From sequence record NC_015251.1: a DNA stretch of 64,000 nt. One strand, 5' to 3'. Below are positions 11,664 through 62,001 of the stretch, in pieces (position 1 is the first letter of the stretch; every line of letters begins with the position of its first letter). The notes below the pieces were generated by a model. It was not told the DNA's origin and did not search any database. It saw only the letters and a list, made by a program, of their open reading frames with translations. Position numbers and translations under genes: made by a program.

Positions 11664-12465
11664 TTAATCAAAACCCCAATCTTTTTGTTTATCTTCACAT
11701 GGATCTTGTGGTTTATATTCAACCCATGGTGTAAATGGTGCAGTTGCTATAGGTAATCCAGTACCAATTATGGTATCAAAATCATCTATAAAATCTTCGG
11801 CTTCATCCGCAATGAAATCGTCTTCTTCATATTCGATTATTGATGTATCAACCCGCTTATCTAGATTTCTAATTGGATCCAATCCAGAATCCATAACAAA
11901 ATCAGAAGGATTAAATTCAGGTTTTGAGTTCTTCACCAGAATAAATAAATTTCTGAGCAGTTATTTTGTATTGTGTTTCCTGACCCATTTGGAAAAATGG
12001 GTTATTAGGTTCAACCCAAGTAACCTCAAAAATGGCATTATTCATAGGGAAATATATAAGATCGCCCTCCCGAGCTTTATCACCATCCGCCTGTCTATTA
12101 AACAACTCTGGGGAAATAGTGAATTGAGCTTCGTCATTAACACTCATACCGAATTTAGAAAAGAATTCCTGACGACCCTCATAACCTTCAAAGCTGTCAA
12201 GATACATTGCGACTCGATATGCCTTGTTGAATTTGGATTGCATATCCTCACCAAATAAAAGGTCTAGCTTTACAAACTCTCTCCGCATATAATAAACTTC
12301 AATACCTTTCATCTGTATAGATTCGGATATCAATTGTCTTGCAAATGCTTGAGAATATCCATATTGATAGTTGTTCATGTGGGGATTTAAAATTTCTTTC
12401 TTGTTTGTGTCGTCTTCGTATCCAGTACCGTTTTCAAGACGAGCAAAAAGATTTTCATTGAACAT
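11664..12465 (-). CDS. gp14: neck protein gp14 (split by an extra base in the T4 run at 11922-11925)
   Basis: LISESIQMKGIEVYYMRRE and GDLIYFPMNN; FIYSGEELK continues as PEFNPSDF in the adjacent 90-aa ORF. Confidence 0.9.
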
Positions 12466-19637: not shown

Positions 19638-20604
19638 TTATCCAATCCTTTTCCAGTAATATAATTTTACTACGCTGGTATCATTCGCGGTTTTATCTTC
19701 CGATAAAAACATATTCCAATATCCATACCCATATCTAGCAGGAGATCCGACCGACCAATCCATATTCATACCGTATTGGCTCCATGGCTCTGGGGTATGA
19801 TCTCGCATATCTCGATAAGCAAAAGTTAATTGTATCTGTTCCTAAAGGGACCACATCACGAACATATAGATCATTAGTTTGGAAATCCAATAGCATTTCT
19901 AACGTTGCGTCACGGACCGCAGTTGCACTAGAACCATCGGGAACTGTAACTCTACGCCCAAATATATCAAGAATAGCTACATCACCAGCGTTTGGTGAAC
20001 TAACTAAACCAGAAAAAACAAGGGTATCTAATTGAGGGGAACCGCCGGGGTCGGTATTATCAGTATTAATGATTATACTATTAACATTCAAACGTCCAAC
20101 ATAAGCCGCATCAGATATTGCATTTTGTACGGTAGGAAAATCTACATGTTTTGTAATATCCTGTAGTGTTGCGTTTCCGATATTCCAACAACCGAAAGTG
20201 TATCCATTACGGGTTTGTATAAATTCATGATCCGTGGATTTACGTGATCGAATCTTAGAACCATCACGCGCCCTTGTGGGTTTTCCGCTGGTTCTTCCAT
20301 CAAATACGGTTGCACTGGCTACGTCAGATTCTACCGTTGATGTAACTGCCCCTAGAGGATTCAATTCCTCAATTACTACTTTGTATTTGGTTTTTCCATA
20401 TGCCAAATTGGTAGGTGTTATTTTTAGATTATCAGTTGCAGCCGTTGGGTCGGCTACAACTGTCCAAGATATACCATCATTAGAAGAACTCCATTCATAC
20501 CGAACAGTATATTCCGGCAAATCTGAAGAAGCTAATACACTGAATTGGTAAGCACTTCCCGAGTAGTATGTAACATTACTCGGCTGTTTATAAATATTTA
20601 TCAT
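19638..20604 (-). CDS. gp11: baseplate wedge/tail pin gp11 with N-terminal Ig-like domain (indel at 19821-19824)
   Basis: FPTVQNAISD and PQLDTLVFSGLV; the shifted frame gives RYGYGYWN...KLYYWKRIG* as at the gp11 C-terminus. Confidence 0.8.
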
Positions 20605-22747
20605 ATTCTACCCTTAACCATCTATGGGCTGTAATTGTAGGTTGAACGATTTGGATCGGGTTTACTGTTGCACTTGGTCTAGTCAACACATAATCCTCTC
20701 TGTATTTTTTATATCCCGGTCCTTCTTCGTCTGGGTCATATTGACAACCACCAACTAGAATATCACCATCAGGATCTGATATAAGTGATTTCTCTGTACT
20801 TTTTGTACCGGGGGTATTTTCTGCCAGAATAACAATCTCATTCGATCCTATGGTTCCACCCGCACTGTGGCGAGGATTCCCGTTTAGATCCAAATCATTA
20901 TTATTCAATCCATATAATGGATCGTTCATATTTTGACTATTCCAACCAGCAACTGTCATTCCCTCTGCATATCGAACCCATACACCCATTCCCATATAAG
21001 ATTGTGGGTTATTTGGGTTGTCAGCATTTTCGTAAATGGTCCCGATTGGATGAAACATATCAAACAACATAGAAACCGTACTTACTTTAACACCGATTTG
21101 GTCATTCGGATCTGGAATAACAGTAGTAGGACCGGGTCTGAATGGATCAGAATACATAATCTTTCCAGTTATGTTAACTGGGGATGATGCAATATATCTC
21201 TCATCAGTTTCACCAAGTATTTCATCAAGTTCTAACAAGGACCCTATATCGTTATTAAACCAACGAATGGTAACAACATCTTCATGTTCCAATTCATCAT
21301 TTATAACGATATCTCTCATCATACCCGCAGAATCCGGAACTGGGCTATAATCCACACCAGAAGGAACCCAGACACCACCAGAACCAATACACGATTCCTC
21401 GGTTATTGCATCCGCACCCTCACATATAAAGAATGGGATATCAGCAGAACCAGATTTAACTAATTGACGACCGTTTACCAAAAGTTCCAACGTATTCGGG
21501 TTGAATGTTTCGTTTGGCTGGAATCCGAATTCGGTAATAGTGAATCGATATTTAGATGATAAATCACCAACATAACGTCTACCCGTCTCAGATACATAAT
21601 CTATAGGTGTTAGTTTGTTCGAATATACACGAATAGTCGCAGTTTCGTATGAACTTCTATATGTAGCCAAACCATCAAGGAAAGTCTCTACAATAACCAC
21701 ATCACCAGCTTCACAAGGTTTATCCAAACGTATTGTATAACCATCAAGAGCTGTTATTTTACTAACACCAACTTTTAAAGTAACGTTAGCAGTTCCTTTA
21801 AAAGCGGCTACGATTTCAGGAACTACACCAGTTGAAACGTATTCTTTAGATGATGGTGATTGTTTGAATATGTAATCTTTTCCGTTGAACGTTACCTTTA
21901 AGAAGTTTTGATTCAGGGGAGTTTTATTAAGATCAAAAAGAATATATGATAAGTTTTTAGTATCATCGATATAGAATTTTGTAATCTCAATATTTTCTAC
22001 TTTACCTGTCAAAACAGAACTAGCAACACCTTTAGTATATCCATACTTAGTGTTATCAAGTTTTTTAGGAGTAACTACTATATTGGATTGTGGTGCTGGA
22101 TTAACACCAACGATAGAACCGTAGTTAGATTCCGGACCGTAGTCTGCACCATAATAAAGAATGTTACCGCGCTTATATACGTTCACAGCAGCGGGATTAT
22201 ATCCTGATGGAAATATATCAGAAAAGTCGGTTTGACCTTCAGTAGCAATATATTCCCGTTTTGCTACAGTAGAAACGTCCCCAGATTTAATATCATCAAC
22301 GAACTTACTTGATACGTATTCCCAATTACCAGGAGAGCAATACACAAGCTCTACGTCCATACGGTTTTTATCTAATCTGTGAGTTCCAGATCCACCCTTA
22401 ACCGTGTTAAAACCCGCAGGGATCAACAGGACTGGGTTAGAACCCCATGTACCATTAACATCACGAATACGAACCACGTTACCGTAATCAGCAACGGTCC
22501 CTAGAGGTAGTTCTACTGTGATCCGACCTGTGGTTGTGTTGATAACCCAAGCCTGTCCCATAACCGCCTTTAGAGGCTTAGTATGGTCTGAATATGGCTT
22601 CCATGCACCAGCGGCATGGGGGATATTACCATCCCCCAGATTGTAATATAACTCGTTAAAGTTATCGTTTGTCTTCTGTCCCCCTTTGCGGAGATAATCA
22701 CCAGTTCCGTCATCAACACGGTTACCTATTATAATTTGCTGTTTCAT
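20588..22747 (-). CDS. gp10: baseplate wedge subunit/tail pin gp10
   Basis: MKQQIIIGNRVDDGTGDYLRKGGQKTNDNFNELY, HPIGTIYENA, VQPTITAHRWLRV. Confidence 0.93.
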   Translation of the reverse strand: MKQQIIIGNRVDDGTGDYLRKGGQKTNDNFNELYYNLGDGNIPHAAGAWKPYSDHTKPLKAVMGQAWVINTTTGRITVELPLGTVADYGNVVRIRDVNGTWGSNPVLLIPAGFNTVKGGSGTHRLDKNRMDVELVYCSPGNWEYVSSKFVDDIKSGDVSTVAKREYIATEGQTDFSDIFPSGYNPAAVNVYKRGNILYYGADYGPESNYGSIVGVNPAPQSNIVVTPKKLDNTKYGYTKGVASSVLTGKVENIEITKFYIDDTKNLSYILFDLNKTPLNQNFLKVTFNGKDYIFKQSPSSKEYVSTGVVPEIVAAFKGTANVTLKVGVSKITALDGYTIRLDKPCEAGDVVIVETFLDGLATYRSSYETATIRVYSNKLTPIDYVSETGRRYVGDLSSKYRFTITEFGFQPNETFNPNTLELLVNGRQLVKSGSADIPFFICEGADAITEESCIGSGGVWVPSGVDYSPVPDSAGMMRDIVINDELEHEDVVTIRWFNNDIGSLLELDEILGETDERYIASSPVNITGKIMYSDPFRPGPTTVIPDPNDQIGVKVSTVSMLFDMFHPIGTIYENADNPNNPQSYMGMGVWVRYAEGMTVAGWNSQNMNDPLYGLNNNDLDLNGNPRHSAGGTIGSNEIVILAENTPGTKSTEKSLISDPDGDILVGGCQYDPDEEGPGYKKYREDYVLTRPSATVNPIQIVQPTITAHRWLRVEYDKYL

Positions 22748-22752
22748 CGTTA

Positions 22753-23680
22753 TTATGCCCCCGATTGCATCAATAGATTTAACGTATACATCTATTGCTG
22801 TTTGACTGATATTAGTTACTGTCAAAATAACAGAACTTCCAGTTATACTATAAGTTGCATCAAATAGAAGGTTATCTTCCGGCTTTGATGGAGTTCTTGT
22901 TCGTATACGCGCATATTCAGTTGAATATACATTGGTGTCTGTATTACTGGTATTATTTACCATCAGTAAAGTTTCGCAAGATTCTTGATGTACAGATGCA
23001 CCACGCTGAGTTACAAATAACATATGCTTTACTACGTTATATTGAGCTTTATTGAAAAGAACTACGTTACGTTGAGCACCAGCGGCTATATTAAGAATAT
23101 TGGCAGCGTATGAAGTAGCACTATCACCAAACATAGAATCTAATTTATAATTCCATTTAGAACCGGCTGGACTACCTTCTGTAACCCACAATCTAATTCT
23201 AAAGTTGGTTCTATTGATTACCATTCTGTTACCCAACGATCCGATAGAATCTCCGGTCCCAGTAGTTTTGATAATTACCTCTCTACCGGTTCCAAATCCT
23301 ACGGAACCATCAGTATTGACCAACTCAATACATTCCCCCGCATGACCACTACCAGCAGGAAGGTTTATTGTAATATCACCCGCACCATCTCTTGTAACTG
23401 ATATATCATGCATAGACCCAAAATCTACAGGGTTACCTGATGGCTGTTCTGAACCTGCATAATACGCTCTTGTATGTTTCTGGTAATAACCGGTTCCATG
23501 CAATGTTTGTACTCGGTTTCCAAATCCAGAAGTTTTACCTATTCTATAATCCCCGAACACGTTCCACATACTATTCAGATCTGCGTTTAGTTTTTCACCA
23601 CCATCAAATAGTGTATCACCCGTTCCCTCTTGACCACGTATACCAGTATCGATTAGCTCTTTTGGTTTTTGAATCGACAT
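22753..23680 (-). CDS. gp9: baseplate wedge tail-fibre connector gp9 (appears fused to gp10 in the ORF track)
   Basis: MSIQKPKELIDTG...GTGDTLFDGGEKLN, HGTGYYQKH, STEYARI; removing one G from the G5 run at 22758-22762 restores a TAATAA stop. Confidence 0.88.
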
Positions 23681-23729
23681 TATTTTATCCTCGTTGATAG
23701 ATTACTTTAGTATTTAGGGTTTTGAAATA

Positions 23730-23764
23730 AAAATCCCCAGCCGTTTAAGACTGGGGATTTTTTA
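23730..23764. terminator. terminator between gp8 and gp9
   Basis: AAAATCCCCAG...CTGGGGATTTT. Confidence 0.7.
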
Positions 23765-24745
23765 AAAACTAAACACTACGTTAAATTCTTCGGTTTGATC
23801 TCTCGAACGAATTACCGGTTGTCTATTATCCATGTATATGATATTTCCTGTATGCCTCTCCAATTGAGAAGGTACATAGCTCATTGCAGTTGCTTTTACG
23901 TCCGGATCGCTAGGGTTTGCTTTGGCAAGTAACGGATTATAAATAATCCCCATTTGACGAAAACCGGTATTTCCTATCTTACTAGAAGCAGGAAAATTAT
24001 AACTATCAAAATATGCTCGGAATCTCAAAGTGCTACATCTGATTCTATTCAACAAATTGTAATCATTCGGATACCAAGTTATAACATGCTGATATCCCCA
24101 AGCGGAAGGATCCGCTTTAAGTTCGTCCGGTGTTGGTACAACAATATATTCGTTAGAACAATCGTTAATAGCAACATCTGACGGGATGGTATATAGATAT
24201 TCCCAAATGTACCCATCTTTCATATCAACACCATCAGATTTTCCGACAGGTAATATACTTTCGTGTGATGGAGTCCAATCACCCCCAACTTTCAAACAGT
24301 CTGTTTTATTGATTATAGAAGTGATAGAACATGCCCCATCTTCCGGAACATCAACACATCGATACACAATCCACCCAGAACCAATTTCAGTTCTGTTATA
24401 TGGAGCAGTGTTAGTAACCACGATATCATTGATATGGAAAGTGTATGGATTTGAATATCGTTGATCTCCCCAATCATTACGAGAAACTACAGGACGGATC
24501 ATCTCTTTTTGTATTTTTACCGCCCCCAACATCCTAGCCCACACATCAGAATATCCCTCAGTTGTATCGTCTGGATATGGGGGAGCAAATTTAGGATCAG
24601 ATTCGTTATCTGCCCAAGCTTGATCCCTCCCAAAATACGCATAAAGTGTATTTTTAGTGGGGTCATCCCCCACTAATGCATAGAAGTTAAGCAGGTTTGA
24701 TACCCTAAAATCGCTGGTAACAACCGCTCTATAAATTACTGACAT
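23762..24745 (-). CDS. gp8: baseplate wedge subunit gp8
   Basis: SVIYRAVVTSDFR, PKFAPPYP, WIVYRCVDVP, DGYIWEYLYTIP and RSRDQTEE. Confidence 0.96.
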   Translation of the reverse strand: MSVIYRAVVTSDFRVSNLLNFYALVGDDPTKNTLYAYFGRDQAWADNESDPKFAPPYPDDTTEGYSDVWARMLGAVKIQKEMIRPVVSRNDWGDQRYSNPYTFHINDIVVTNTAPYNRTEIGSGWIVYRCVDVPEDGACSITSIINKTDCLKVGGDWTPSHESILPVGKSDGVDMKDGYIWEYLYTIPSDVAINDCSNEYIVVPTPDELKADPSAWGYQHVITWYPNDYNLLNRIRCSTLRFRAYFDSYNFPASSKIGNTGFRQMGIIYNPLLAKANPSDPDVKATAMSYVPSQLERHTGNIIYMDNRQPVIRSRDQTEEFNVVFSF

Positions 24746-27700
24746 TTTTCACCTACCTTTATTTGTGTCGGCTGTTCTGGAATAACCAAATTACTAACAT
24801 CTCTGGGGTTATTCAGATCGTCTTTAAGTCTCTTAACACTCAATCTTGATAGATCTGTATATCTACTAGAAAAATAACTAAACAAAGGACTACCGTCTAA
24901 ACGTCTCTGAGACGGCGTATAAACGACTCCATCTATTGTCCAATTATCCTCATCGGCGTCATAATCCCTTGGCTCAAAAACGTTCCCAGTGGCTTCATTT
25001 ATCGCATTGTTCCATTCAGTCACACTAAAAGGTGTTTGTGTAAGTTCTTCCTGAACAAGTACACCAGTTGTCGGGTCGAACAATGGCAACGGATCAATAA
25101 ATGAACTGTTTGGATCCTGAACAGTTTTAAACTTTGGAGTCATAGAAGGTAATCCAGAATCCCATCTATAAGCCTTGTTTATTTCTGCAAAGGTTTCTTC
25201 ATGTTTCATAGATACACCACCATTAACAAATACGGTCAATAGAGTTATACCAACGAATCCAAAACCTACTGGATGAACAAAACGAATAACATCATCCTTG
25301 TATCTTGCTGTATTTAGCTCTGACCGGATACGCATAATGTAATATGAACGATTTCGGTTTATGTAATCAAGGTCTGAATATGCGAGTTCTTTACCCTTAA
25401 CCCCCCGAGTAATATTACCCTCAAACGGATTAGATTCAGATTTTATTATTTGACCATCCTCGAACTTACCTATAAGGTTATGAATTGTGATTTTCCATCT
25501 AAGGTTACCATCAACAAATTCACGTTCTATATAAGTTACGTTAGCTCTACCGGTTTTCGTATATATCGTTCTACCAACAAGATCCGGACTGATATTGGGT
25601 GATTTTACCAGTATATCATAGTCAACACCAACTTGTGATTCCGATTTCATATCCACATCAGCATTATATAGCAATTTGAACAAAAACTTATAACTATCTA
25701 TTTTTCCTCTAGAGCTATAAAAAGTAGCCGCATTTGCCTCAAAGAATTTACCACCTTCTCCCCGTTGGTTTGATCTAGAATATATTACGTCCTTCTCATT
25801 TCCGACCAAAGATATACAAAAGAATCTTTCTCTCTTGGATATTACAGTTTTATGAAGTTTTAACAATTTTACCATACATTGAGTCAGAACCCTCTGAAAG
25901 GAATTGCATATAATATTCCCCAAACTTAGTAAAGTTAGAATCGTTAAAGTAATATTCCCGGTCCCATCAATCTCAACATAGGGCTAATATCTGGGTCTAT
26001 CAAACCCGGTTATATCTTTCTCTTCTTCAACTCCCGGACGTTCTTGATTTACCCAATGAAGCCTTGTAGTGCGACATTTTCCGGCTTCCATAATAACAGA
26101 TGCAGTATCACGAACCCGATATGGAAACTCGTAATATCCAAATATTTCACCCCCTAAATCATTTTCTCTATTGTATTTCTTATGTATCAAAATACCATTC
26201 CAATATTTACTAAAGTTTTGGAAGTTTATATTATCTAAGAAGAACGTAACAGATCCAACATCCCACACTTCTTTGTTGATTTGACGTTTTTGGTCTATGG
26301 TGTATTGGTATTTTTCTGATGGAGTAACCAAAACTATTCTATTTTCATGGTTTTTCCAAATACGCTCACCAGTAATCGCCATATAATCAAATCCCGCCTC
26401 GTTGTAATATTTTGCGGGTTCTAATTTAAAGGTTATACCATCAGAGGTTTCCCATTGATACATATATACTTTTTTGTTACTAAGATAAGAATAATCCGAA
26501 CTATATTTAACCGCAGATGATACATCTTCCGGATAACAACTAGGTAGATCCAAATCAACTACGGTATCAGTATATTTGTAATTTGCCGCAGAAACAAACA
26601 GCTTAACCCCATTAATACTCATATCCGAGTATTCATGTTCTATATTAAATCGTTCCTCTTCGGACTCACCAAATACTCTTGTCCACGTTCCACCAGTAGG
26701 TACTGAAGGTTCCACGATTTGACCATTTTCCATGTATAGATCGAAAGTTGCCGGATATGCGAAATCCGCAACAAATCTTGCATATTTAAGTGGGTCAATA
26801 ATTTTATTAACTGGATCTGAATATATATCAGCAATAAATTTAAATGAATCCCGATTCCCAGCAGTAAACAAAAATCCACATCCATTAATGTCCCGTGAGT
26901 TTTCCCTTTGAAAATACGGGGTTTCCCAGCGAGGACTAACTTGCCCAACATGAGTACCATCAGGTAAAAACGTTGCGATACTTCTTACCCAACCATCAAT
27001 ACCATTAGTAAAATCAACATCTCCATCTGTTAAATTCATTTCCCCAAGTCTAAACACTTCCTTTTCATAGGTTTCATCGAATCTATAAACCCCAGAACAC
27101 TCAGATCTAACAACAAGTTTTTTATTCCGTTTGTCGTCATTTATAGATTTAACTTCACCACTAACTAGCGCATAGCAAGTATTGTTAAGTACGTCCATTT
27201 TTTTAATAACAATTCTTGGATTATCTGGGCAAATTTTATATTGAGTAGGATCCCACAATATTTTGCCGTTACTATCAACAGGACCACCACTTAGCTGAAT
27301 CCTACGCATAACACCATTAGCGGCAGCGTATAACCAACGATCTGATACTGTCTGAGATTCAACCTTACGGCGAATATCGTCCGGATACATGGCAAACGAA
27401 CCAAATACCATAGTTGGGAAAGGTATGGATGTATCAATATCCATTTTAACAAAGGTAAGTTCATCATCAGACCAGAAATGAAGATCTGAACTGAATCTAA
27501 CTTCATCCACGTTACGACCATAAAAAGCATAATCATAACCTAACAGGAATGCAGTATTATCATTTTGACTCATAATACTATTACCGGTAGGATATCCTAT
27601 ACGATCAGTAACCGCTTGGTAATAATACCAGTTTTGTCCACCGTCATTCGTTACTTTACTAAAGTTTTGATATTTCTCGAATGCATAGACTACTCTATTG

Positions 27701-28263
27701 TTCGCACCCAAATATATATTGGATAGATTGCTACAAATCTTAGAAACAGAACCAAGAATTTCATGATATTCATCATCTTCAGCTATCTTATCTTCTACGT
27801 TGGAGACGTTAGATATACCCGGATCGTATATGAAATTTTCATTCATAAGACTTGCCTGCATTACATCAGAGTTGAAATTGATATAATTCAATTTGTTCTT
27901 ATAAAGCTTCTTATCTATAAATTCAAACGAAGGGATAAAGTTTGACATAGTAGTTACTTGATAAGCATTCTCTGTAAATGTTTCAATTACTTCACTAGTC
28001 ACCCAATCGGATTGAGTAAGACCCGGATGTGTTGTTGAAATTCGGAGTTTATATTTTGTATCTGGTATTAAAGAAGAACTAAAATATTCAGGGGCGGATA
28101 CCACCCCTAATTGAGTCCAACTGTCATTACCAACTACATCAGAAACCATTGTATATTCAACAATATAATAAAAGTTAGAACCTACATCATCCCATTTCAG
28201 ATGAATAAAGTTTGCGCCTAACATAGCTACGCGCAAACTTGTAATAGTTGGAGCTTTATTCAT
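24736..28263 (-). CDS. gp7: baseplate wedge initiator gp7 (multiple indels clustered at about 25740-26100)
   Basis: MNKAPTITSLRV; YYEFPYRVRD; SYKFLFKLLYN; RFVHPVGFGFVGITLLT; the intervening gp7-like peptide is recoverable only by several frame changes. Confidence 0.9.
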
Positions 28264-34012: not shown

Positions 34013-35250
34013 TCTTTCTCTCCTTACCACGAATATCAGAATCTGAAATCAGTTCTGCGCTTATGAAATATGTTTCGCGTGTTAATGTGTGTGTCAACGA
34101 ATTTACTAACCAATGACCGGCGTCTTTTGATGTTAGTTCCCCGTTGGTATCACCAGCTATTATATTTACCGATGGTTCCACAAGACAGATCTGTATTACC
34201 GGGAATCTGTATCAGCATACGTTTTGCGTTGAGAGAAGCCCTATTTGTAGTTCTAATTCCAACAGAGTTACCATTAGACCCAATGTTTATATATTTATAC
34301 ATTTGATCTTCGTTGGAAAGAATAACACATGTATTCCGTTCTGGGGTTATTTCACCACCAAACCAAGGCTCTGGGTTTAATTTAGCGATATATCTGCTTA
34401 ACCCATAATAATCTTGGTAACTACTTCTATATGATTTATTTGTTATGCTCATTGTATGAACATCCACACCTAAACCACCAGATCTATATTGTTCTGCAAG
34501 ATTATATCCCTTCACCCTCTGTAGTTTTATTATTTTATTGTACATTGATATATCATGGGTTGCTTCAAATGTAAGATCCACTTTAGGTTCTTCTATCATT
34601 AAAGTGGTTCCACTCTTAAAGTTCACTCCATTTATATCTTCGTAAAAATAAAAATTACTATCCCCTTTAGCATTCGGTTCAGAAGATTGTGAATTCTGAG
34701 CTAAATGATTTATAACAGATAATGGAGTTAGGTTAGGTATTACTATATCCCGATTATATAAAGTTTTTTCTATAAAAATATAATCATCTTTAAATCCTAT
34801 TAAATTAAGCATATCCTTAATTATAGAATGAATTGAAGTATTCAAATAACTTTTACTAACTTTACGATATTCGTTATTCATTTCCTCTTCAGACTGAAAA
34901 TACATTCTAACATATTTCTTTATCTGTGTATTTGGAGAGGTTATATCTTCATATCTCAATATTTTAAACATCTTAGAATATGTTTTTGCTTCTTCACCAT
35001 TTAGATGTACTGACCGAAAACTTATTTGTATCTTTTCATCACCACGGGGGTTTATTGTGTTTATAAGGTTCATGGAATCTACAAAATCCATTGAACCTTT
35101 CAACAACCCTTGGGTGATTCCTTCGGTAATACTAACCGACTTAAATATTTCCGATATATCCAAGCCGGTAGGATCATTACCCTGAACAAAAGCAATTCGG
35201 TCGATAGTAAAGTTTTCATAAGCAACTGAACTACGGCGACTAATTCCCAC
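34002..35250 (-). CDS. baseplate hub protein (gp27-like; indel near 34155)
   Basis: SVSITEGI, RDIVIPNLTP and FYFYEDINGVNF; the shifted frame gives GHWLVNSLTH; lies between gp53 and gp5. Confidence 0.7.
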
Positions 35251-38073: not shown

Positions 38074-39068
38074 TGATTTTTGAACTTAATGAAAGAGAAG
38101 AAACCCCCGCAGAGAAACGAAGAAAGCGAGATTGGATCGGTATAGGATCCGATTATATGGCTACTCGAAAGAAATCTGGAATTACTGCTAAAAAGTATGC
38201 AGAAGAAAAAGGATTGAATTACGAAACGTTTAGTCGTGCGATGAGACGACACAGAGAGGATATAAAGAAATATTACTCCCTAACTAATCCTAATAAGACA
38301 AAAGAACAATGGATTGAACTTGGTGTTGATTATCTTACCAAGAAAGAAAAATCTAATATTACTCAGAAAGAGTATATAGAACGAAGTGAACTCAATAAAG
38401 AAACCGCAGAAAGGGCGTTTAGAAGATTCAAGGATGATATTATCATCGCTAAGAGAGTAAAGGATGCCAAATACTCAAATAAGAAACTAACTAGTGGTGA
38501 AAAATATCAAGTTCTGTTACAGGATTTTCGGGGTAAGGTGAGGCAATTTGAGAAAGAACCTCAAAAATCTGAACGGAAATCCATTGAATGGTTTAGTGGG
38601 TTTATAAAGAAAAACGTTAGAGGTCATAAGGTAACTAGACCGGTAGCGGGCAGACTATATACATTCGCATATGATGCAAAACATAAAGCAACCTTGCCAT
38701 ATTGGGATAAATTTCCATTGATTGTATATTTGGGAGAAAGTCGCAAGCATAAAGGTATGCTCATGGGTCTGAACTTGCATTATATACCAGTGAAAGCCCG
38801 TAAAGAATTTATGGAAGAACTTCTTAAATATGCAACAACAGACCGAATTACTAACAGAACGTCCCTAAATATAAATTGGGGAAAGGTTCGAGGAATGAAA
38901 GGTGCAGATCATATGATAAAAGCATATTTGCCTAATCATGTGAGAGGACCGTTTATGGAAGTTAAACCGCAGGATTGGAGTTCTGTTATTAATCTTCCGA
39001 CACAACGGTTTGTTACTGGACCAGAATCTAAGACCTTCAATACTAATAAAGTTTGGAGTTCATACTAA
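38073..39068 (+). CDS. gp2: DNA end protector gp2
   Basis: GRLYTFAYDAKHKATLPYWDKFPLI, GLNLHYIP, IKAYLP. Confidence 0.95.
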   Translation: MIFELNEREETPAEKRRKRDWIGIGSDYMATRKKSGITAKKYAEEKGLNYETFSRAMRRHREDIKKYYSLTNPNKTKEQWIELGVDYLTKKEKSNITQKEYIERSELNKETAERAFRRFKDDIIIAKRVKDAKYSNKKLTSGEKYQVLLQDFRGKVRQFEKEPQKSERKSIEWFSGFIKKNVRGHKVTRPVAGRLYTFAYDAKHKATLPYWDKFPLIVYLGESRKHKGMLMGLNLHYIPVKARKEFMEELLKYATTDRITNRTSLNINWGKVRGMKGADHMIKAYLPNHVRGPFMEVKPQDWSSVINLPTQRFVTGPESKTFNTNKVWSSY

Positions 39069-40015
39069 TGTCACTTATACCACCGATTCCGTCAATTGAT
39101 AGCATGATAAATAGTGTTATCGGTTTTGGCGAAGATACTTTTAATAGTCTACTTGATGATGGGGATTCTAACGAAATCCCCGATTTAACTAGGTTTATGA
39201 GAAAAGTAGAAAATTCAGATCTTGCTAGAGCTAACATGTTTATTGTTAGATTTGGGGATTTTAGTTCCACATTATATAGTGATGGTGTGTTTGACATGGA
39301 TTTACCTATATTTCCAGATACAAACAGTCCGGATGTTAATGGGGGATTATTCTCAGGGAGTTCATATTCTTGGCATAGAATTCAAGATATGGCACTTGGT
39401 GAAGCCCATAAAGTTCTTACCCCTAGCATGAAAAAGATATTTGGTGCTTGGGATCCTTCACTGATACGGATTATACCGGGTGCGGGAGATATACTGGATG
39501 GATTTTTAGGAACCGATTACGATGTGAATAAAGATTTAGCTCTGATGGTTAAAAGTGTTGGGTTGCCTAGTTCTACCCTTGAGACTACAATTAACCGTAT
39601 TGATAAATTACCTAGACACGAAGTAAAGGGTCGGAACTATGGAACTATGACCATGACGTTTTATTGTTCCCCCGGTTATGAGGAACGGTCGTTAATGCTT
39701 ACATGGCAAAATACAATCGTAAACCCGAATAACGGGAGATTTGGTTTTTACCAACAATACGCAAAACCTATAGACGTAATTACTCTTGATCGTCATGGGG
39801 TCAAAAGGTCTACAGTTCACAACACCGGATGTTTTCCTATTGAAGTTGGTGAGGTTCAACTTGATTTTGAGAACAATTCTCAAGTAGCAACATTCACAGT
39901 AACGTTTGCAGTTGCAACAACCGTTCATGTACCTACACAAGGTAAGGAAACTGGTATTGATTCGATTGAATCTATTATAAGAAGAACCACCGGAGTTTTA
40001 AAAGCTATTCGGTAA
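39053..40015 (+). CDS. gp54: baseplate tail-tube initiator gp54
   Basis: DLARANMFIV (gp19 paralogue), LMVKSVGLP, CFPIEVGEVQL. Confidence 0.85.
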   Translation: MEFILMSLIPPIPSIDSMINSVIGFGEDTFNSLLDDGDSNEIPDLTRFMRKVENSDLARANMFIVRFGDFSSTLYSDGVFDMDLPIFPDTNSPDVNGGLFSGSSYSWHRIQDMALGEAHKVLTPSMKKIFGAWDPSLIRIIPGAGDILDGFLGTDYDVNKDLALMVKSVGLPSSTLETTINRIDKLPRHEVKGRNYGTMTMTFYCSPGYEERSLMLTWQNTIVNPNNGRFGFYQQYAKPIDVITLDRHGVKRSTVHNTGCFPIEVGEVQLDFENNSQVATFTVTFAVATTVHVPTQGKETGIDSIESIIRRTTGVLKAIR

Positions 40016-40353: not shown

Positions 40354-40426
40354 AAAGTCATAGAGTTACTGGGGTATGGTACAATGCCTAGATACATTTA
40401 GACTATTTTAAACAAGAATTTATAAA

Positions 40427-41205
40427 ATGCCACTAAGATTGATAAAAGTGCTCTGCTCGCTGCCATTCAAAAAACAGTACAACAGACTAAATTAACTTTG
40501 TCTGATGGTAGAGAGATTATGATTAGAGCTTTCGTAATGAAAGAAATGAAACTTCTAATGTTAGCAAATGAAGCGGGTGTAGGTATTGAAGAAGCTATTA
40601 TTCAAATAGTTAAAAACTGTGTATTAACTAAAGGTATTGATGTTGAAACACTACCAAGATTCGATCTTGAATCTATATATCTAGCACTATATAAGCTTTC
40701 TAAAGCATCCCCAATAATTCCTGCTATGTTTACATGTGCGAATGAGATTCTGGATGAAGAGGGTAATGTTACCTATGACCAGTATGGAGAAGTCGCGAAG
40801 TGCGGTAATGAGATTAAAGTTAATATCAATTTGAATAGCTCTAGATTAACAGAAGCTCCTGATCGTAGTATAGTTCTTAGTGATGATATAACTATACTAA
40901 TGCGATATCCTAACATTAGCGAAATGGAATATTTTAATGTACAGAAAGAATCTGACTTGTTCAATTTAATCGTTCGCTGTATTGATGAAGTTCATATGGG
41001 GAATAGTATCGTTAGAGCTGGTGTAGACCTTCCATACGAAGATATGGGGGAGATTATGGAATATGTCGATGATAAGGCAATTATTAAACTGAGTAGTTTT
41101 GTTACCGGTATTCTTCTACATATATCAAATATACAAGTACGCTGTAAAAAATGTGGACACGAAGAGATCGTAACTCTTACGGGGGTAGCTAGTTTTTTCG
41201 CTTAA
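40427..41205 (+). CDS. gp26: baseplate hub assembly/tail chaperone gp26 (probable 1-nt deletion just after ATG 40427)
   Basis: IRAFVMKE, two CxxC-like Cys clusters, ILMRYP, C-terminal GVASFF. Confidence 0.85.
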
Positions 41206-41372
41206 CCCTCGTTAATAATACAATATTTGACCACTTTAATACAGTTTATAAGTTACGAAAAGATGGATGGAGTCATTCCGATCTTGAAGAAATGACTCCA
41301 TTCGAATTCGGTATATATGTTCATCTATATTTGAATGAACTAAAAGAAGCGGCGAACGAGGGTAATAAATGA
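41199..41372 (+). CDS. gp51: gp51-like hub assembly peptide; no start codon, reachable by -1 shift from gp26
   Basis: Open frame RLTLVNNTIFDHFNTVYKLRKDGWSHSDLEEMTPFEFGIYVHLYLNELKEAANEGNK* resembles the short gp51 family; stop overlaps the gp29 ATG. Confidence 0.7.
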   Translation, partial: RLTLVNNTIFDHFNTVYKLRKDGWSHSDLEEMTPFEFGIYVHLYLNELKEAANEGNK

Positions 41373-43177
41373 TTAACGATAAGCAATCAAGGGAACTAAC
41401 CGCATCTGTAAATGATGTGGTAGAATCCATGAATATCGTTACGGATTCTATGCTGACCCTAGATGATAAATCTGGGGTTCTAGCCAAAACCACAACGGAT
41501 TTAACCGCAGCCTATGATATTAATTCTGATTCTTCTATACAAGTTGCACAAGAGCAAGAAAAGCTTGCAACTCAATTAAAAAAGAGTAGAAAGAATATAA
41601 AGGCCCGAGATAAATCTGAGGATGGATTTGCCGAGGAAAGACGTAGGTATCTTAGTGATATTCTAAATAGACAACAGCCTTTAGTAGATCATACTTCTCC
41701 TGAATCTCCAAATACGGTTCCTGAAGATACAAGGGAAACGCTAGAAGAATTTATTAAAAGGGAGATTGGAACTAAAGATGAATTCATAGAAGAATTCAAA
41801 AAGGAAAATGGAAAGACTGGAAAATTTATTCGAGACGTTGCTTCAAAGGCAAATATTGTTGGTCGAATGAAAAATTCAGAGACTTCCGCGACTGCTAAAA
41901 TTCTTGGTCATACGATGAGTGCCGGTGTCGGTATGATCACAGGAACCATTAATGATATATTGTCAACTATTCCCGGTTTTCAACAGGTGTCTAATGCTTC
42001 TAAGTTTGTAGGTGGGGCAGTTCTTGACGCACATAACGCACGTAAGGAAAAGAATCTAGATGAAAGGGCATCAAAGGCTTATTCAGAGAAGAAGGCTGAC
42101 GCAGTTTCTAAATTCAAACAAATCCCAACAAACTCAGGATCCCCCGAAGAAAAAGTAAAAGAAGAACGGGAAAACGCTAATAAGAAAAAGGATAGAGACG
42201 AGAATAAACAAGAACGTGATAAAAGTGAAAAACGTTTTGGTGGATTGATGAAATGGCTTAAAGCGTTTCAAATGTCTATGATATTCAGTAAGCTATTAGG
42301 TTTCCTTCTTCCTATTGGTGGAATACTAATGAGTCTTGCCGGTTCTATTCCTGCTTTAATGGCTACTCTTGGTGGATTGGCTGGTGCGATTGGGCTTGCT
42401 ATATCGGGTGCTATGACTAAGTTTTTGGATTTGGCAAAAGGTTTATTTGGTATAAAGAAACCAACAGGAACTCCAAAAACTTCCAGTCCAGATCCTAAAA
42501 AAACAACCAAAACTCCTACATCAACTTCTCCTGATGTGAATGGTAAAAAACAACCTACTCCATCAACAACGCAACCGAAACCTAGTGGTCCTGCTGATAA
42601 GATACCAAAAGATGCAGGTAAAACTTTGGGTAAAGAAGCGGCTAAAGATGTTGCCGGTAAAAAGTTAGGGAGAAAAGGTGCAGAGATTGCAGGTGAAAGT
42701 GTATTTAAGCGGGTTGCTTCTAGTGGTGCTATAAAGGTTGCTGCTAAAGTCGGTCTTAGAATGATTCCATTTGTAGGAACTGCTTTAACCCTGTATGAGA
42801 TCGGTAGTTATTTGGCAGAAAACCCCGATGTAGTTGATAAAGGGAAAGCTATGCTGAGTGAAGGGGCTTCAGCCGTTGGAAACTTCTTTGGTTTCGGTGA
42901 AGCTCAAGCTTCCGAATCTAAAATAGAGCCGGTGATCCGATCTGGTGAAGATAAAGCACAATCGCAGAGAATCGAAGAGAGTAATAAGAAGGTTGAAGAA
43001 TATAGGAAAAAAGTAAATGCGGAAAAAGAAGAAATGGCTTCCCGTAGAATGGGGGCTGAGTATGCGGCTTTGCATAATACTACCTATAACGCTATGAGTT
43101 CCGTTCTTCCTTCTGGATTTGGTCCTTATAATGCAGAACAACCTATTGGTTCATATGGAGTACAACCGTTATCATGA
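41369..43177 (+). CDS. gp29: tape measure protein gp29
   Basis: 602 aa, helical, hydrophobic Gly/Ala segment and Lys/Pro/Thr linker; follows gp26/51; size close to T4 gp29. Confidence 0.75.
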   Translation: MINDKQSRELTASVNDVVESMNIVTDSMLTLDDKSGVLAKTTTDLTAAYDINSDSSIQVAQEQEKLATQLKKSRKNIKARDKSEDGFAEERRRYLSDILNRQQPLVDHTSPESPNTVPEDTRETLEEFIKREIGTKDEFIEEFKKENGKTGKFIRDVASKANIVGRMKNSETSATAKILGHTMSAGVGMITGTINDILSTIPGFQQVSNASKFVGGAVLDAHNARKEKNLDERASKAYSEKKADAVSKFKQIPTNSGSPEEKVKEERENANKKKDRDENKQERDKSEKRFGGLMKWLKAFQMSMIFSKLLGFLLPIGGILMSLAGSIPALMATLGGLAGAIGLAISGAMTKFLDLAKGLFGIKKPTGTPKTSSPDPKKTTKTPTSTSPDVNGKKQPTPSTTQPKPSGPADKIPKDAGKTLGKEAAKDVAGKKLGRKGAEIAGESVFKRVASSGAIKVAAKVGLRMIPFVGTALTLYEIGSYLAENPDVVDKGKAMLSEGASAVGNFFGFGEAQASESKIEPVIRSGEDKAQSQRIEESNKKVEEYRKKVNAEKEEMASRRMGAEYAALHNTTYNAMSSVLPSGFGPYNAEQPIGSYGVQPLS

Positions 43178-43743
43178 TAACCAATCAGTCACACATTACA
43201 AATATGCGTCTGGAAATACCAGACGCAAATGCAACAATTCATTTTGTTAGTGCTGCTCAATCCGTGACCCTTCCATCAATTGAAATGGAATTGTCTCGGG
43301 TTAGTACAAATCAAATGAGTATGGGTATGCTTCCCGGTTCTAAGATAAACTATGAACCTGTGAGAATTCGATTTTTACTTGATGAAGAATTTGAAGCATA
43401 TAAAGAAATATACCAATGGATTATATCAACAACTGATAGTCGGTCATTTAATTCAACCGCACATCTACCGGGTATGCGACCATTATCTATGTCGGTTCAT
43501 ATTTTGGATAACCATAAACGAAAAATTTTAATGACCTTGAAATTGAATAACCCATTTCCATTTTCTATAGACGAAATTGAGATGGGTTATACTGAAGAAG
43601 GAAACCAAGCTTTGTTTGGTATGGTCTCGTTTGGATATTCATCGTTTTCGTTGTTATCCGGCGATGGAGATCGCGGTGTGGAAATCTTACCTAAACAAGA
43701 CTCAGTAGGGACTCCGAACTTTCATCCATTTTCTGGAAAATAG
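43174..43743 (+). CDS. gp3: tail completion/sheath stabilizer gp3
   Basis: QSVTLPSI, LPGSKINYEP, FLLDEEFEAYKEIYQW. Confidence 0.92.
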   Translation: MITNQSHITNMRLEIPDANATIHFVSAAQSVTLPSIEMELSRVSTNQMSMGMLPGSKINYEPVRIRFLLDEEFEAYKEIYQWIISTTDSRSFNSTAHLPGMRPLSMSVHILDNHKRKILMTLKLNNPFPFSIDEIEMGYTEEGNQALFGMVSFGYSSFSLLSGDGDRGVEILPKQDSVGTPNFHPFSGK

Positions 43744-61662: not shown

Positions 61663-62001
61663 ATGAAAACCATCCATTGTAAGCCTGAGTTTGTGGAATT
61701 CTATCACGGTTCGTGTACTCTCGGCCTTAAAGGAAATATGTTGCTTCCTCCTGAAATGACTGATACTATTTCTGAGAAGGGTAGAAAGAAGAATCTAGAT
61801 CGGGTATTCTTCACCAAGGATAAAGGTCTTGCTAAGGTATACGCAAGGCGGGCGGCTCGGTCTATTGGTGGGGAACCTACTTTGTTTCGAGTTGTTGCGC
61901 CGGTAGATACCGTGTTTATGTCAGAAACTCCGGGGGCGACTGTGTATCATGCCGCATGGGCATTCGTTGAAGAAATGCCTTTTGGTAAATTGAGCGACTA
62001 A
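61663..62001 (+). CDS. ADP-ribosyltransferase-like protein (Arr/ART fold)
   Basis: FYHGS, LLPP, VFFTKDKGLAKVYA: H-G-S/T...F-T...A-x-x-Y-A pattern. Confidence 0.65.
   Translation: MKTIHCKPEFVEFYHGSCTLGLKGNMLLPPEMTDTISEKGRKKNLDRVFFTKDKGLAKVYARRAARSIGGEPTLFRVVAPVDTVFMSETPGATVYHAAWAFVEEMPFGKLSD

What the first reader, a model, noticed from the sequence alone, without database searches (positions are those of the whole stretch)
41181..41372. Probable lambda G/GT-type programmed -1 frameshift joining gp26 to a start-less gp51, right before the tape measure gene
Seen: gp26 ends AGT-TTT-TTC-GCT-TAA, containing the canonical X-XXY-YYZ heptamer T-TTT-TTC (41193-41199). An SD-like GGGGGT lies a few nt upstream (41181-41186), and a small TTAAC/GTTAA hairpin lies just downstream. 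The -1 frame is open for 57 codons, encodes a gp51-like peptide (DGWSHSDLEEMTPFEFGIYV), has no ATG/GTG/RBS of its own before that conserved part, and its stop overlaps the gp29 ATG. Established: long-tailed phages make tail-assembly chaperones G and GT by such a shift directly upstream of the tape measure gene; T4 itself is usually treated as an exception. Inference: gp26 and gp51 here are G and T.
Basis: partly seen in the sequence, partly recalled or inferred. Interest (0 to 1): 0.75.

Follow-up and report, generated by a model that had tools for sequence, protein, structure and literature searches.

The report
Conserved -1 frameshift in T4-like chaperone gene
Aeromonas phage 65 most likely makes a short and a long form of its tail/hub assembly chaperone from gene 26 by ribosomes slipping back one base at an invariant U-rich site, the same two products that phage T4 encodes as two separate genes (26 and 51); it is a well-supported member of a known kind of phage recoding, not a new one.

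Summary
The window is Aeromonas phage 65 (GU459069.1). Gene 26 ends with an in-frame T TTT TTC heptamer one codon before its stop. The -1 frame is closed just 5' of the heptamer, then open for 57 codons, and its stop overlaps the ATG of the next gene, a 602-aa tape-measure candidate. That -1 peptide is the C-terminal domain of T4-type gp51. In about 115 related loci the heptamer is invariant, the gp51-C homology starts at the heptamer's last base in the -1 frame, and the variable codon position changes phase there. These loci span Aeromonas, Cronobacter, Vibrio, cyanobacterial, rhizobial and uncultured T4-like phages. In phage 65 the 31 conserved codons before the first possible start codon change mostly synonymously. 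T4, Phi1 and Lazarus instead carry a stand-alone gp51 (gp26 paralogue plus the same C-domain in one frame), and their gp26 lacks the heptamer. An independent sequence (phage 65.2) keeps the site. The claimed hairpin is negligible, and the SD-like element is strong here but not conserved. GenBank records do not annotate the shift. Vladimirov, Gautam and Davidson (Virology 2022, not readable here) already identified gp26/gp51 as the T4-like tail assembly chaperones. Verdict: real, well supported, a new member of a known kind.

The parts
40426..41205 (+). Gene 26 (short chaperone form, PF12322 T4_baseplate). The conserved reading frame runs from 40426; the GenBank CDS starts at ATG 40519.
   Evidence: Pfam PF12322 E 9.2e-46; phrog_150 'baseplate hub' E 3.8e-51. 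The N-terminal codons align with avDM6/CC2 gp26. It is a single copy in the genome. AF2 model pLDDT 86.
41181..41186 (+). SD-like GGGGGT, 6 nt upstream of the heptamer; a possible, unproven stimulator.
   Evidence: Anti-SD duplex -9.9 kcal/mol, the best within this gp26. It is strong in Aeromonas phages and weak in cyanophages (-2.2). Only the GG of a conserved Gly codon is invariant.
41193..41199 (+). Slippery heptamer T TTT TTC in the gene 26 frame: the recoding site.
   Evidence: It is invariant at positions 1-6 in 83-85 unique contexts. The variants seen are TTTTTTG (phiM9) and TTTTTTT (VmeM-32, phiM12). The site is the same in the independent sequence of phage 65.2. U_UU.U_UU.C is among the shift-prone heptamers in E. 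coli (PMC4066793).
41203..41205 (+). TAA stop of the short form, one codon after the heptamer.
   Evidence: The stop lies 1 codon after the heptamer in 105 of 107 loci of the first survey, and 3 codons after in the other 2.
41199..41372 (+). -1 frame extension of 57 codons plus TGA, equal to the gp51 C-terminal domain and translated only after the shift.
   Evidence: phrog_634 'baseplate hub assembly catalyst' E 1.3e-11. It aligns colinearly with the C-termini of Phi1 gp51 and with the -1 peptides of distant phages (A2). A profile of A2 hits T4 gp51 at E 9.7e-13. In the 31 start-less codons there are 14 synonymous and 4 non-synonymous codon changes versus CC2.
41292..41372 (+). GenBank ORF 65p119 (26 aa, 'hypothetical'). 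It is most likely an annotation artefact: the tail of the -1 extension from its first ATG.
   Evidence: Conserved homology extends 31 codons upstream of this ATG.
41369..43177 (+). 602-aa ORF 65p120, the tape-measure (gp29-equivalent) candidate. Its ATG overlaps the TGA of the -1 extension.
   Evidence: phrog_11300, unknown function. It has no significant match to Phi1 gp29 (E 0.068) or to the PDB. It is the only unassigned long ORF in the tail cluster and lies between gene 26 and gene 3. The phiM12 counterpart is annotated 'similarity to phage tape measure proteins'.
39068..40015 (+). Gene 54 (tube-like baseplate-tail tube initiator), the upstream neighbour.
   Evidence: The same order, tube-like gene - gene 26 - tape-measure candidate, occurs in Aeh1, S13, ValKK3, phiM12 and a Logan contig.
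43174..43743 (+). Gene 3 (tail terminator / sheath stabiliser), downstream of the tape-measure candidate.

Best explanation
Gene 26 of phage 65 carries a programmed -1 ribosomal frameshift site.

**Proposed mechanism.**
- Most ribosomes read AGT TTT TTC GCT and stop at TAA. This gives the short form, gp26.
- A minority slip back one base while the two Phe codons of T TTT TTC occupy the P and A sites. They then read 57 further codons in the -1 frame, which adds the gp51 C-terminal domain, and terminate at a TGA that overlaps the start of the next gene.
- The phage therefore makes two proteins that share the PF12322 body and differ by a C-terminal extension. T4 encodes the same pair as two paralogous genes, 26 and 51.
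- By analogy with lambda G/GT, and following the published assignment of gp26/gp51 as the T4-like tail assembly chaperones, the pair would chaperone the tape-measure protein encoded immediately downstream during hub and tail-tube initiation, in a ratio fixed by the shift frequency.

**Shown here:** the site, the frames, their conservation, the homologies and the selection on the -1 codons.

**Inferred:** that ribosomes (rather than RNA polymerase) slip, the ratio of the two forms, and the chaperone function and its client.
For: 1. **Geometry.** The -1 frame is closed immediately 5' of the heptamer, and the 0 frame closes 4 nt after it.
2. **Conservation.** The arrangement 'T TTT TT[C/G/T] plus gp51-C domain in the -1 frame, starting at the heptamer's last base' is found in 106 of 107 loci with DNA downstream in the first survey. 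It is also found in 9 more loci from other lineages. Together these cover Emmerichvirinae, Cinqassovirus, Schizotequatrovirus, Kyanoviridae, Pootjesviridae, Emdodecavirus and uncultured contigs.
3. **Synonymous sites.** The heptamer's third-position bases are 99-100% conserved against 31-65% for flanking third positions. The codon before it is AGT, GAT, AAT, TCT or GGT, always ending in T.
4. **Change of coding phase.** The least conserved phase is the third position of the gp26 frame upstream (0.54) and the third position of the -1 frame downstream (0.66).
5. **No possible start.** There are 31 conserved codons before the first ATG/GTG/TTG in phage 65. Against CC2 they show 14 synonymous and 4 non-synonymous codon changes, with 15 of 20 base differences at the third position.
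6. **Natural in-frame equivalent.** Phi1 and T4 gp51 consist of a gp26 paralogue (BLASTP E 1e-12 and 1e-5; both hit PF12322) plus a C-terminus that aligns colinearly from the junction onward.
7. **Negative control.** T4, Phi1 and Lazarus gp26 keep the Phe-rich C-terminal motif but have no in-frame heptamer and no T run longer than 3.
8. **Independent sequence.** Phage 65.2 keeps the site, while two other frame discrepancies of the phage 65 record are absent from it.
9. **Known slipperiness.** U_UU.U_UU.C is a known shift-prone heptamer in E. coli (PMC4066793).
10. **Single copy.** Phage 65 has only one PF12322 gene and no separate gp51.
Against: - There is no expression evidence of any kind: no peptide, footprint or immunoblot.
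- No conserved downstream RNA structure was found, and the local hairpin is negligible, so efficiency is probably low and cannot be estimated.
- The SD-like element is not conserved.
[quoted passage not shown] I could not read it.
- In phiM9 an ATG overlaps the gp26 stop, so coupled initiation is possible there.
- gp26 has no detectable sequence or fold similarity to solved chaperone structures.
- The client is assigned as tape measure by position only.
Confidence: 0.85

Rival explanations
1. Transcriptional slippage. RNA polymerase stutters on the T6 run, so a fraction of mRNAs carry an altered run length, and standard translation of those mRNAs gives the same long form.
For: The site is a homopolymer run. 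Two lineages have a run of seven T. The protein product would be indistinguishable. No stimulatory RNA structure is needed.
Against: - The run is only six bases in about 110 of the loci.
- From my own knowledge, known bacterial slippage sites use longer runs, and I did not test this.
- The run is always aligned as X XXY YYZ with the gp26 frame.
- Its seventh base is 99% conserved, which polymerase slippage does not require.
- U_UU.U_UU.C is an established ribosomal shift motif.
Confidence: 0.07
2. Independent initiation. A small separate gp51 is made from its own start, as GenBank annotates (65p119; cyanophage g51), or by termination-reinitiation after the gp26 stop.
For: All records examined annotate a short separate ORF or nothing. 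In phiM9 an ATG overlaps the gp26 stop.
Against: - In phage 65 there is no ATG/GTG/TTG for 31 codons, yet those codons are conserved and under purifying selection.
- Homology begins at the heptamer in 100+ loci, upstream of every annotated start.
- Independent initiation does not explain the invariant heptamer or its loss in T-evens.
- Gene callers find no such ORF in the protein collection.
Confidence: 0.05
3. Assembly or sequencing error in a homopolymer run. On this view the true gene is a single in-frame ORF.
For: The phage 65 record does contain two other single frame discrepancies, in gene 14 and at the 5' end of gene 26. Both are absent from the near-identical phage 65.2.
Against: The same run length and frame offset appear in phage 65.2, in avDM6, Aswh_1 and CC2, and in about 110 other independently assembled genomes and metagenome contigs. 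Of the 150 best cluster representatives, 137 end within 4 residues of the Phe-Phe motif.
Confidence: 0.01
4. Decaying relic. The -1 domain is a remnant of an ancestral fusion and is no longer expressed in phage 65.
For: None specific, apart from the lack of expression data.
Against: The frame is open in 85 of 85 contexts. Substitutions are mostly synonymous. Identity to CC2 is 82% at the protein level against about 70% at the DNA level. The genome has no other gp51, and T4 genetics says gp51 is essential (PMC3004832).
Confidence: 0.02

Closest known systems
Phage T4 gp26 and gp51 (hub assembly chaperone/'catalyst'; assigned as the tail assembly chaperones of T4-like phages by Vladimirov, Gautam & Davidson, Virology 2022, PMID 34826709)
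   Same: - The body belongs to the same protein family (PF12322).
- The C-terminal domain is the same one as in gp51 (phrog_634; the A2 profile hits T4 gp51 at E 9.7e-13).
- The outcome is the same pair of products: a short form and a long form that share one body.
   Different: - T4, Phi1 and Lazarus encode the two forms as two diverged, divergently transcribed paralogues, and gene 26 there has no slippery site.
- Phage 65 has one gene and two frames, so the ratio of forms would be set by recoding rather than by separate expression signals.
- In phage 65 the gene sits directly upstream of the tape-measure candidate, whereas in T4 genes 27 and 28 intervene.
Lambda G/GT-type tail assembly chaperone frameshift (Xu, Hendrix & Duda 2004; reviewed in PMC5009743)
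   Same: [quoted passage not shown]
- The -1 extension has no start of its own.
- No RNA structure seems to be required.
- The gene lies just before the tape-measure candidate and after a tube-like gene.
- Two products share an N-terminal body.
   Different: - There is no detectable sequence or fold relationship to solved chaperones.
- The body is larger (about 230-260 aa) and has Cys pairs that look like a zinc ribbon (weak Pfam hints).
- The extension is only 57 aa.
- The heptamer is all-U and lies 1 codon from the stop.
- The review states that the G-T shift is conserved in long-tailed phages 'except T4'.
Short 'gp51' ORFs annotated in cyanophage, vibriophage and rhizobiophage genomes (noted by Sullivan et al. 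2010, PMC3037559)
   Same: They are the same -1 stretch downstream of gene 26. [quoted passage not shown]
   Different: They are annotated as independent genes from internal ATGs. The conserved region and the heptamer upstream of those ATGs indicate that they are the tail of a frameshift product. Aeh1 is not missing the domain.
dnaX-type -1 frameshift with an upstream SD-like stimulator and a downstream hairpin
   Same: A strong SD-like element lies upstream of the heptamer in phage 65 and its Aeromonas relatives.
   Different: The spacing is only 6 nt, there is no stable downstream hairpin, and the SD-like element is not conserved across the family.

Membership tests
Tail assembly chaperone -1 frameshift (lambda G/GT type) | [quoted passage not shown] | tested here: met
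   T TTT TTC at 41193-41199, one codon before the stop.
Tail assembly chaperone -1 frameshift (lambda G/GT type) | Downstream ORF in the -1 frame, overlapping, with no start codon or RBS of its own before its conserved part | tested here: met
   The -1 frame is open only from 41193. The first ATG/GTG/TTG comes 31 codons later, and the conserved homology starts at the heptamer.
Tail assembly chaperone -1 frameshift (lambda G/GT type) | Heptamer and frame offset conserved among relatives despite sequence divergence | tested here: met
   About 115 loci share it. Heptamer positions 1-6 are invariant in 83-85 unique contexts.
Tail assembly chaperone -1 frameshift (lambda G/GT type) | Located between the tail tube gene and the tape measure gene | tested here: inconclusive
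   The upstream gene is gp54, which is tube-like. The downstream gene is a 602-aa ORF that is a tape-measure candidate by position and elimination only, with no significant similarity to gp29.
Tail assembly chaperone -1 frameshift (lambda G/GT type) | Sequence or fold homology to characterised chaperones | tested here: not met
   Pfam gives only PF12322. A PDB profile search found nothing. Foldseek against the PDB found no match at E <= 0.001 and no TM-score above 0.16.
Tail assembly chaperone -1 frameshift (lambda G/GT type) | Two products made in a fixed ratio, both needed for tail assembly and absent from virions; the body binds the tape measure | not testable with these tools
   No expression or interaction data are available. 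T4 gp51 is reported as required but absent from particles (PMC3004832).
T4 gp26/gp51 family | PF12322 (T4_baseplate) body | tested here: met
   E 9.2e-46. BFVD fold matches to gp26/gp51 proteins reach E 1e-24.
T4 gp26/gp51 family | gp51 C-terminal domain | tested here: met
   phrog_634 E 1.3e-11. The A2 alignment is colinear with Phi1 gp51. The A2 profile hits T4 gp51 (E 9.7e-13) and Lazarus gp51 (E 8e-12). A homologous ORF on a Logan contig carries PF28602 Gp51_C (weak).
T4 gp26/gp51 family | Long form encoded as one continuous ORF (as in T4 gene 51) | tested here: not met
   The body and the C-domain are in different frames in phage 65, and the genome has no second PF12322 gene.
Transcriptional slippage site | Long homopolymer run (longer than six, from my own knowledge of bacterial cases) | tested here: inconclusive
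   The run is six T in nearly all loci and seven in two lineages. Sequence alone cannot exclude low-level slippage.
dnaX-type stimulated -1 frameshift | Conserved upstream SD-like element and stable downstream stem-loop | tested here: not met
   The SD-like element is strong only in some clades. There is no consensus structure, and the hairpin is -1.1 kcal/mol.

The most novel reading that the evidence does not exclude
A -1 frameshift at an almost invariant U_UUU_UUC, one codon before the gene 26 stop, may be the ancestral and general way in which the T4 superfamily makes its long chaperone form. The superfamily here means cyanophages, vibriophages, rhizobiophages, 'schizo-T-evens' and thousands of uncultured lineages. 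On this reading the T-even clade is a derived exception that replaced recoding by gene duplication and in-frame fusion. If this has not been spelled out in the 2022 paper that I could not read, it explains the 'except T4' statement in the recoding literature and the 'truncated' or 'missing' gp51 of comparative genomics. It also implies that every database record I examined, and probably most others, mis-annotates these genes.
Probability: 0.35. Interest if true: 0.7.

Novelty: new member of a known kind. Interest (0 to 1): 0.45.

Why it matters
It links phage T4's long-puzzling hub 'catalyst' gp51 to the universal short-form/long-form chaperone logic of long-tailed phages. T4 is not an exception in principle: its relatives use the classic frameshift, and T4 hard-wired the two products as two genes.

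In practice, gene 26/51 is mis-annotated in phage 65, Aeh1 and every cyanophage, vibriophage and rhizobiophage record I examined (gp51 'missing', 'hypothetical' or truncated), and no record annotates the shift.

The site is also an unusually clean natural example of a stimulator-poor U_UUU_UUC shift, conserved across hosts as different as cyanobacteria, rhizobia and gamma-proteobacteria.

The general idea is already published (tail assembly chaperone frameshifts, 2004; gp26/gp51 as T4-like chaperones, 2022), which limits the surprise.

Tried and rejected
- **Downstream stimulatory RNA.** RNAalifold on 13 diverse sequences gave no pairs. Rfam found nothing relevant. Rejected as part of the signal.
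- **SD-like stimulator.** It is real in phage 65 but not conserved, so I kept it only as a possible local enhancer.
- **Homology of the 602-aa ORF to T-even gp29.** BLASTP E 0.068, no PDB hit, and a different PHROG. Not shown.
- **Fold similarity of gp26 to solved chaperones.** None found.
- **The search for related loci with the 8-sequence gp26 alignment.** It failed because the alignment is too divergent, so I used single-protein queries instead.
- **Protein-word search with the 57-aa peptide.** It found no called ORFs.
- **Literature.** Ten full-text searches found no paper describing a gp26/gp51 frameshift. The key 2022 Virology paper surfaced only as a reference and is not held.
- **Sigma-70 promoter and terminator scan.** Nothing above the shuffled expectation between gene 26 and the next gene.
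Full report
**Identity of the window.** The window matches Aeromonas phage 65 (GU459069.1; Straboviridae, Emmerichvirinae) at 100% identity, and window base 1 is record base 62001. The finding lies in the tail/baseplate cluster. On the + strand the gene order is 4, an HNH endonuclease, 2, 54, 26, a 26-aa 'hypothetical' ORF, a 602-aa 'conserved hypothetical' ORF, 3 and 1. No gene 27, 28, 29 or 51 is annotated in the window, which holds the tail and baseplate cluster.

**The observation.**
- Gene 26 ends AGT TTT TTC GCT TAA. T TTT TTC lies at 41193-41199, in register as X XXY YYZ.
- The -1 frame has a stop immediately 5' of the heptamer and is then open for 57 codons after it. It ends at a TGA that overlaps the ATG (41369) of the 602-aa ORF.
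- A ribosome can therefore enter the -1 frame productively only within the roughly 10 nt that contain the heptamer.
- The first ATG/GTG/TTG of the -1 frame is 31 codons further on. That ATG is the start of GenBank's 26-aa ORF.
- GGGGGT (41181-41186) and the TTAAC/GTTAA inverted repeat are both present.

**What the two pieces are.** The gene 26 frame is a PF12322 'T4_baseplate' protein (E 9.2e-46) and matches phrog_150 'baseplate hub'. The -1 peptide has no hit in the Pfam copy at hand. It matches positions 58-111 of phrog_634 'baseplate hub assembly catalyst', that is gp51, at E 1.3e-11. A tblastn of the peptide finds the border between genes 26 and 51, or the C-terminus of gene 51, in Aeromonas, Cronobacter, Vibrio, Synechococcus, Rhizobium and Escherichia (Krischvirus) phages.

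**Conservation of the signal.** I read the junction in the following sets of sequences:
- three Aeromonas relatives at 70-90% DNA identity;
- Aeh1, Cronobacter S13, cyanophage S-RSM4 and Sinorhizobium phiM9;
- 80 IMG/VR contigs related to S-RSM4 and 18 related to S13 at 28-36% protein identity.

A script located the gp26 frame and the gp51-C domain with profiles of alignments A1 and A2. Of 108 loci:
- 106 have T TTT TTC and phiM9 has T TTT TTG;
- the 0-frame stop follows after one codon in 105 and after three codons in 2;
- the gp51-C homology is in the -1 frame in 106 (one further locus is cut off);
- the homology starts at the last base of the heptamer in 103 of those 106, and within two codons of it in the other 3.

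Nine more loci from further lineages show the same arrangement, with TTTTTTC or TTTTTTT: Synechococcus phages B3 and Sf-CH11, Vibrio phage VmeM-32, the KVP40-like ValKK3, Paraglaciecola GD1, Sinorhizobium phiM12, phage 65.2 and two Logan contigs.

A profile search of 1.84 billion cluster representatives finds 4,385 family members. Of the best 150 (none more than 50% identical to another), 137 end within four residues of the Phe-Phe motif.

**Selection rather than chance.**
- In 83-85 unique contexts, heptamer positions 1-6 are invariant and position 7 is 99% conserved. The third positions of the preceding codons show only 31-65% for the commonest base.
- The codon before the heptamer varies (AGT, GAT, AAT, TCT, GGT) but always ends in T.
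- The least conserved codon phase switches at the heptamer, from the third position of the gp26 frame (0.54 over 45 nt upstream) to the third position of the -1 frame (0.66 over 45 nt downstream).
- The -1 frame is open for at least 49 codons in 85 of 85 contexts, and the other two frames in none.
- Between phage 65 and CC2, the 31 codons with no possible start show 14 synonymous and 4 non-synonymous codon changes. Fifteen of the 20 base differences are at third positions.
- The first four residues of the -1 peptide, directly after the heptamer, are among its best conserved (A2).

**The T-even comparison.** The one exception in the first survey is Phi1 (Krischvirus).
- Phi1 has a stand-alone 256-aa gp51, transcribed divergently from gene 26.
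- Phi1 gp26 and gp51 are paralogues (BLASTP E 1e-12 over 190 aa) and both hit PF12322.
- The last 59 residues of gp51 align colinearly with the -1 peptides, beginning right after the shared Phe-rich motif.
- T4 itself is the same. Its gp26 and gp51 match at E 1e-5, and its gp51 carries the gp26-like body (E 6e-24) followed by the C-domain (E 9.7e-13) in one frame. Acinetobacter phage Lazarus is also the same.
- T-even gp51 is therefore the natural in-frame counterpart of the product predicted for phage 65. I did not build any joined sequence.
- As a control, gene 26 of T4, Phi1 and Lazarus has no in-frame heptamer and no T run longer than three. T4 keeps the Phe-Phe dipeptide, Phi1 has Phe-Leu and Lazarus Phe-Val, each spelled with non-slippery codons.
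- A tblastn finds full-length gp51 in 1,381 phage records, mostly T-even-like phages of enterobacteria and Acinetobacter. Phage 65 has a single PF12322 locus.

**Assembly error.** The phage 65 record does have two other single frame discrepancies. One splits gene 14, and one leaves the conserved 5' codons of gene 26 without an in-frame ATG. Both are absent from the 99%-identical, independently sequenced phage 65.2. Phage 65.2 nevertheless has exactly the same heptamer, stop and -1 stretch. Together with the distribution above, this excludes an error at this site.

**Stimulators.**
- RNAalifold finds no shared structure in the 100 nt after the heptamer.
- The SD-like element pairs with the anti-SD at -9.9 kcal/mol in phage 65, at -6.9 to -7.9 in Aswh_1 and CC2, at about -5 to -6 in Aeh1 and S13, and at -2.2 in S-RSM4.
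- Across 82 contexts the site averages -4.5 kcal/mol against -1.4 for background. Part of this comes from an invariant Gly codon.
- The signal is therefore essentially the heptamer, perhaps helped locally by rRNA pairing and by the nearby stop.
- Sharma et al. list U_UU.U_UU.C among the shift-prone heptamers in E. coli, active above 0.1% without stimulators, and found it in IS elements (PMC4066793).

**Function.**
- The 602-aa ORF is the only unassigned long ORF of the tail cluster. It lies between gene 26 and gene 3, and in the local alignment with gp29 a charged, Lys/Glu-rich stretch is followed by a hydrophobic segment in both proteins.
- It is not significantly similar to Phi1 gp29 (E 0.068) or to anything in the PDB.
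- Its phiM12 counterpart is annotated as similar to tape measure proteins.
- The order 'tube-like gene - gene 26 with -1 extension - long ORF' recurs in Aeh1, S13, VmeM-32, ValKK3 and phiM12. In cyanophages a lysozyme- or peptidase-domain hub protein follows instead, so adjacency to the tape-measure candidate is not universal.
- T4 literature calls gp26 and gp51 hub assembly chaperones and states that gp51 is essential but absent from particles (PMC3004832). The Lazarus record annotates gp26, gp51 and gp28 as 'tape measure protein assembly chaperone'.
- An AlphaFold2 model of gp26 (pLDDT 86) has no PDB neighbour. It matches gp26/gp51 proteins of T4-like, Campylobacter, PaBG-like and jumbo phages in BFVD.
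- The fold family is therefore distinct from solved chaperones, and the G/GT relation is one of logic, not of demonstrated homology.

**Prior knowledge.**
- The 2016 recoding review says the G-T shift is conserved in long-tailed phages 'except T4' (PMC5009743).
- Sullivan et al. 2010 saw that cyanophage and vibriophage gp51 are about 20% of the normal length and that Aeh1 'lacks' gp51. They did not invoke recoding (PMC3037559).
- None of the GenBank records I opened, up to 2025, annotates a joined CDS.
[quoted passage not shown] It summarises that some T4-like phages carry one short gene and one fused long gene instead of frameshifting (PMC10885494).
- That paper is not held. I cannot say whether it also describes the conserved heptamer in the other T4-like phages.
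- The identification of gp26/gp51 as the chaperone pair is therefore published. The phage 65 site is a new, unannotated member. The breadth and invariance of the signal may or may not be new.

**Verdict.** The mechanism is most likely -1 ribosomal slippage on U_UUU_UUC, giving a short and a long chaperone form. This is a new member of a known kind, and I score interest as moderate.

Noticed in passing
window 11664-12465 (- strand): Gene 14 (neck protein) is not annotated in GU459069: locus tags 65p093/094 are missing between gp15 and gp13. It reads as two overlapping ORFs of 182 and 90 aa, which means one frameshift-type discrepancy. Phage 65.2 (99.9% identical) and avDM6 annotate two neck proteins here, so this is probably a sequencing error in the phage 65 record.
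   Followed up: partly
window 40426-40518 (+ strand): The 5' end of gene 26 holds about 30 codons in the gp26 frame that align with the N-termini of avDM6 and CC2 gp26. They have no in-frame ATG in phage 65 (one frame discrepancy relative to avDM6), and GenBank starts the CDS at 40519. Phage 65.2 annotates the full 259-aa protein.
   Followed up: partly
window 34150-35250 (- strand), 65p111: This 'conserved hypothetical' gene next to gene 5 matches phrog_350 'tail protein' (E 9e-79) and phrog_1135 'baseplate hub' (E 6e-6). It is probably the unannotated gp27 equivalent.
   Followed up: partly
window 20588-28263 (- strand): GenBank annotates genes 9 and 10 as one fused gene ('9plus10') and gene 7 as two genes (7a, 7b). 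These are unusual baseplate wedge architectures compared with T4.
   Followed up: no
gp26 protein (window 40498-41202); Phi1 gp26 in L008: Two conserved Cys pairs (one invariant Cys and a C-x-x-C near the C-terminus) give weak zinc-ribbon Pfam hints (PF03604 E 0.25; PF08792 E 0.0096 in Phi1). gp26 may be a zinc-binding protein.
   Followed up: no
L120 2367-2495 (Logan contig SRR30872623_1951): A Pfam family PF28602 'Gp51_C' is on record for the short ORF downstream of gene 26. It is not in the Pfam copy available to search_protein_families, so the phage 65 peptide could not be scored against it directly.
   Followed up: partly
L111 (Acinetobacter phage Lazarus, MN782535.1): gp26, gp51 and gp28 are all annotated 'tape measure protein assembly chaperone'. 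This functional assignment exists in annotation space, but I could not trace it to a readable paper.
   Followed up: partly
BFVD matches of model m80bd253059fb: The gp26 fold is also found in uncharacterised proteins of non-T4-like large myophages: Campylobacter CP220, Pseudomonas PaBG, the Erwinia jumbo phages Yoloswag and phiEaH2, Bacillus BCD7 and Achromobacter Motura. I did not check whether those genes carry a frameshift or a long-form paralogue.
   Followed up: no
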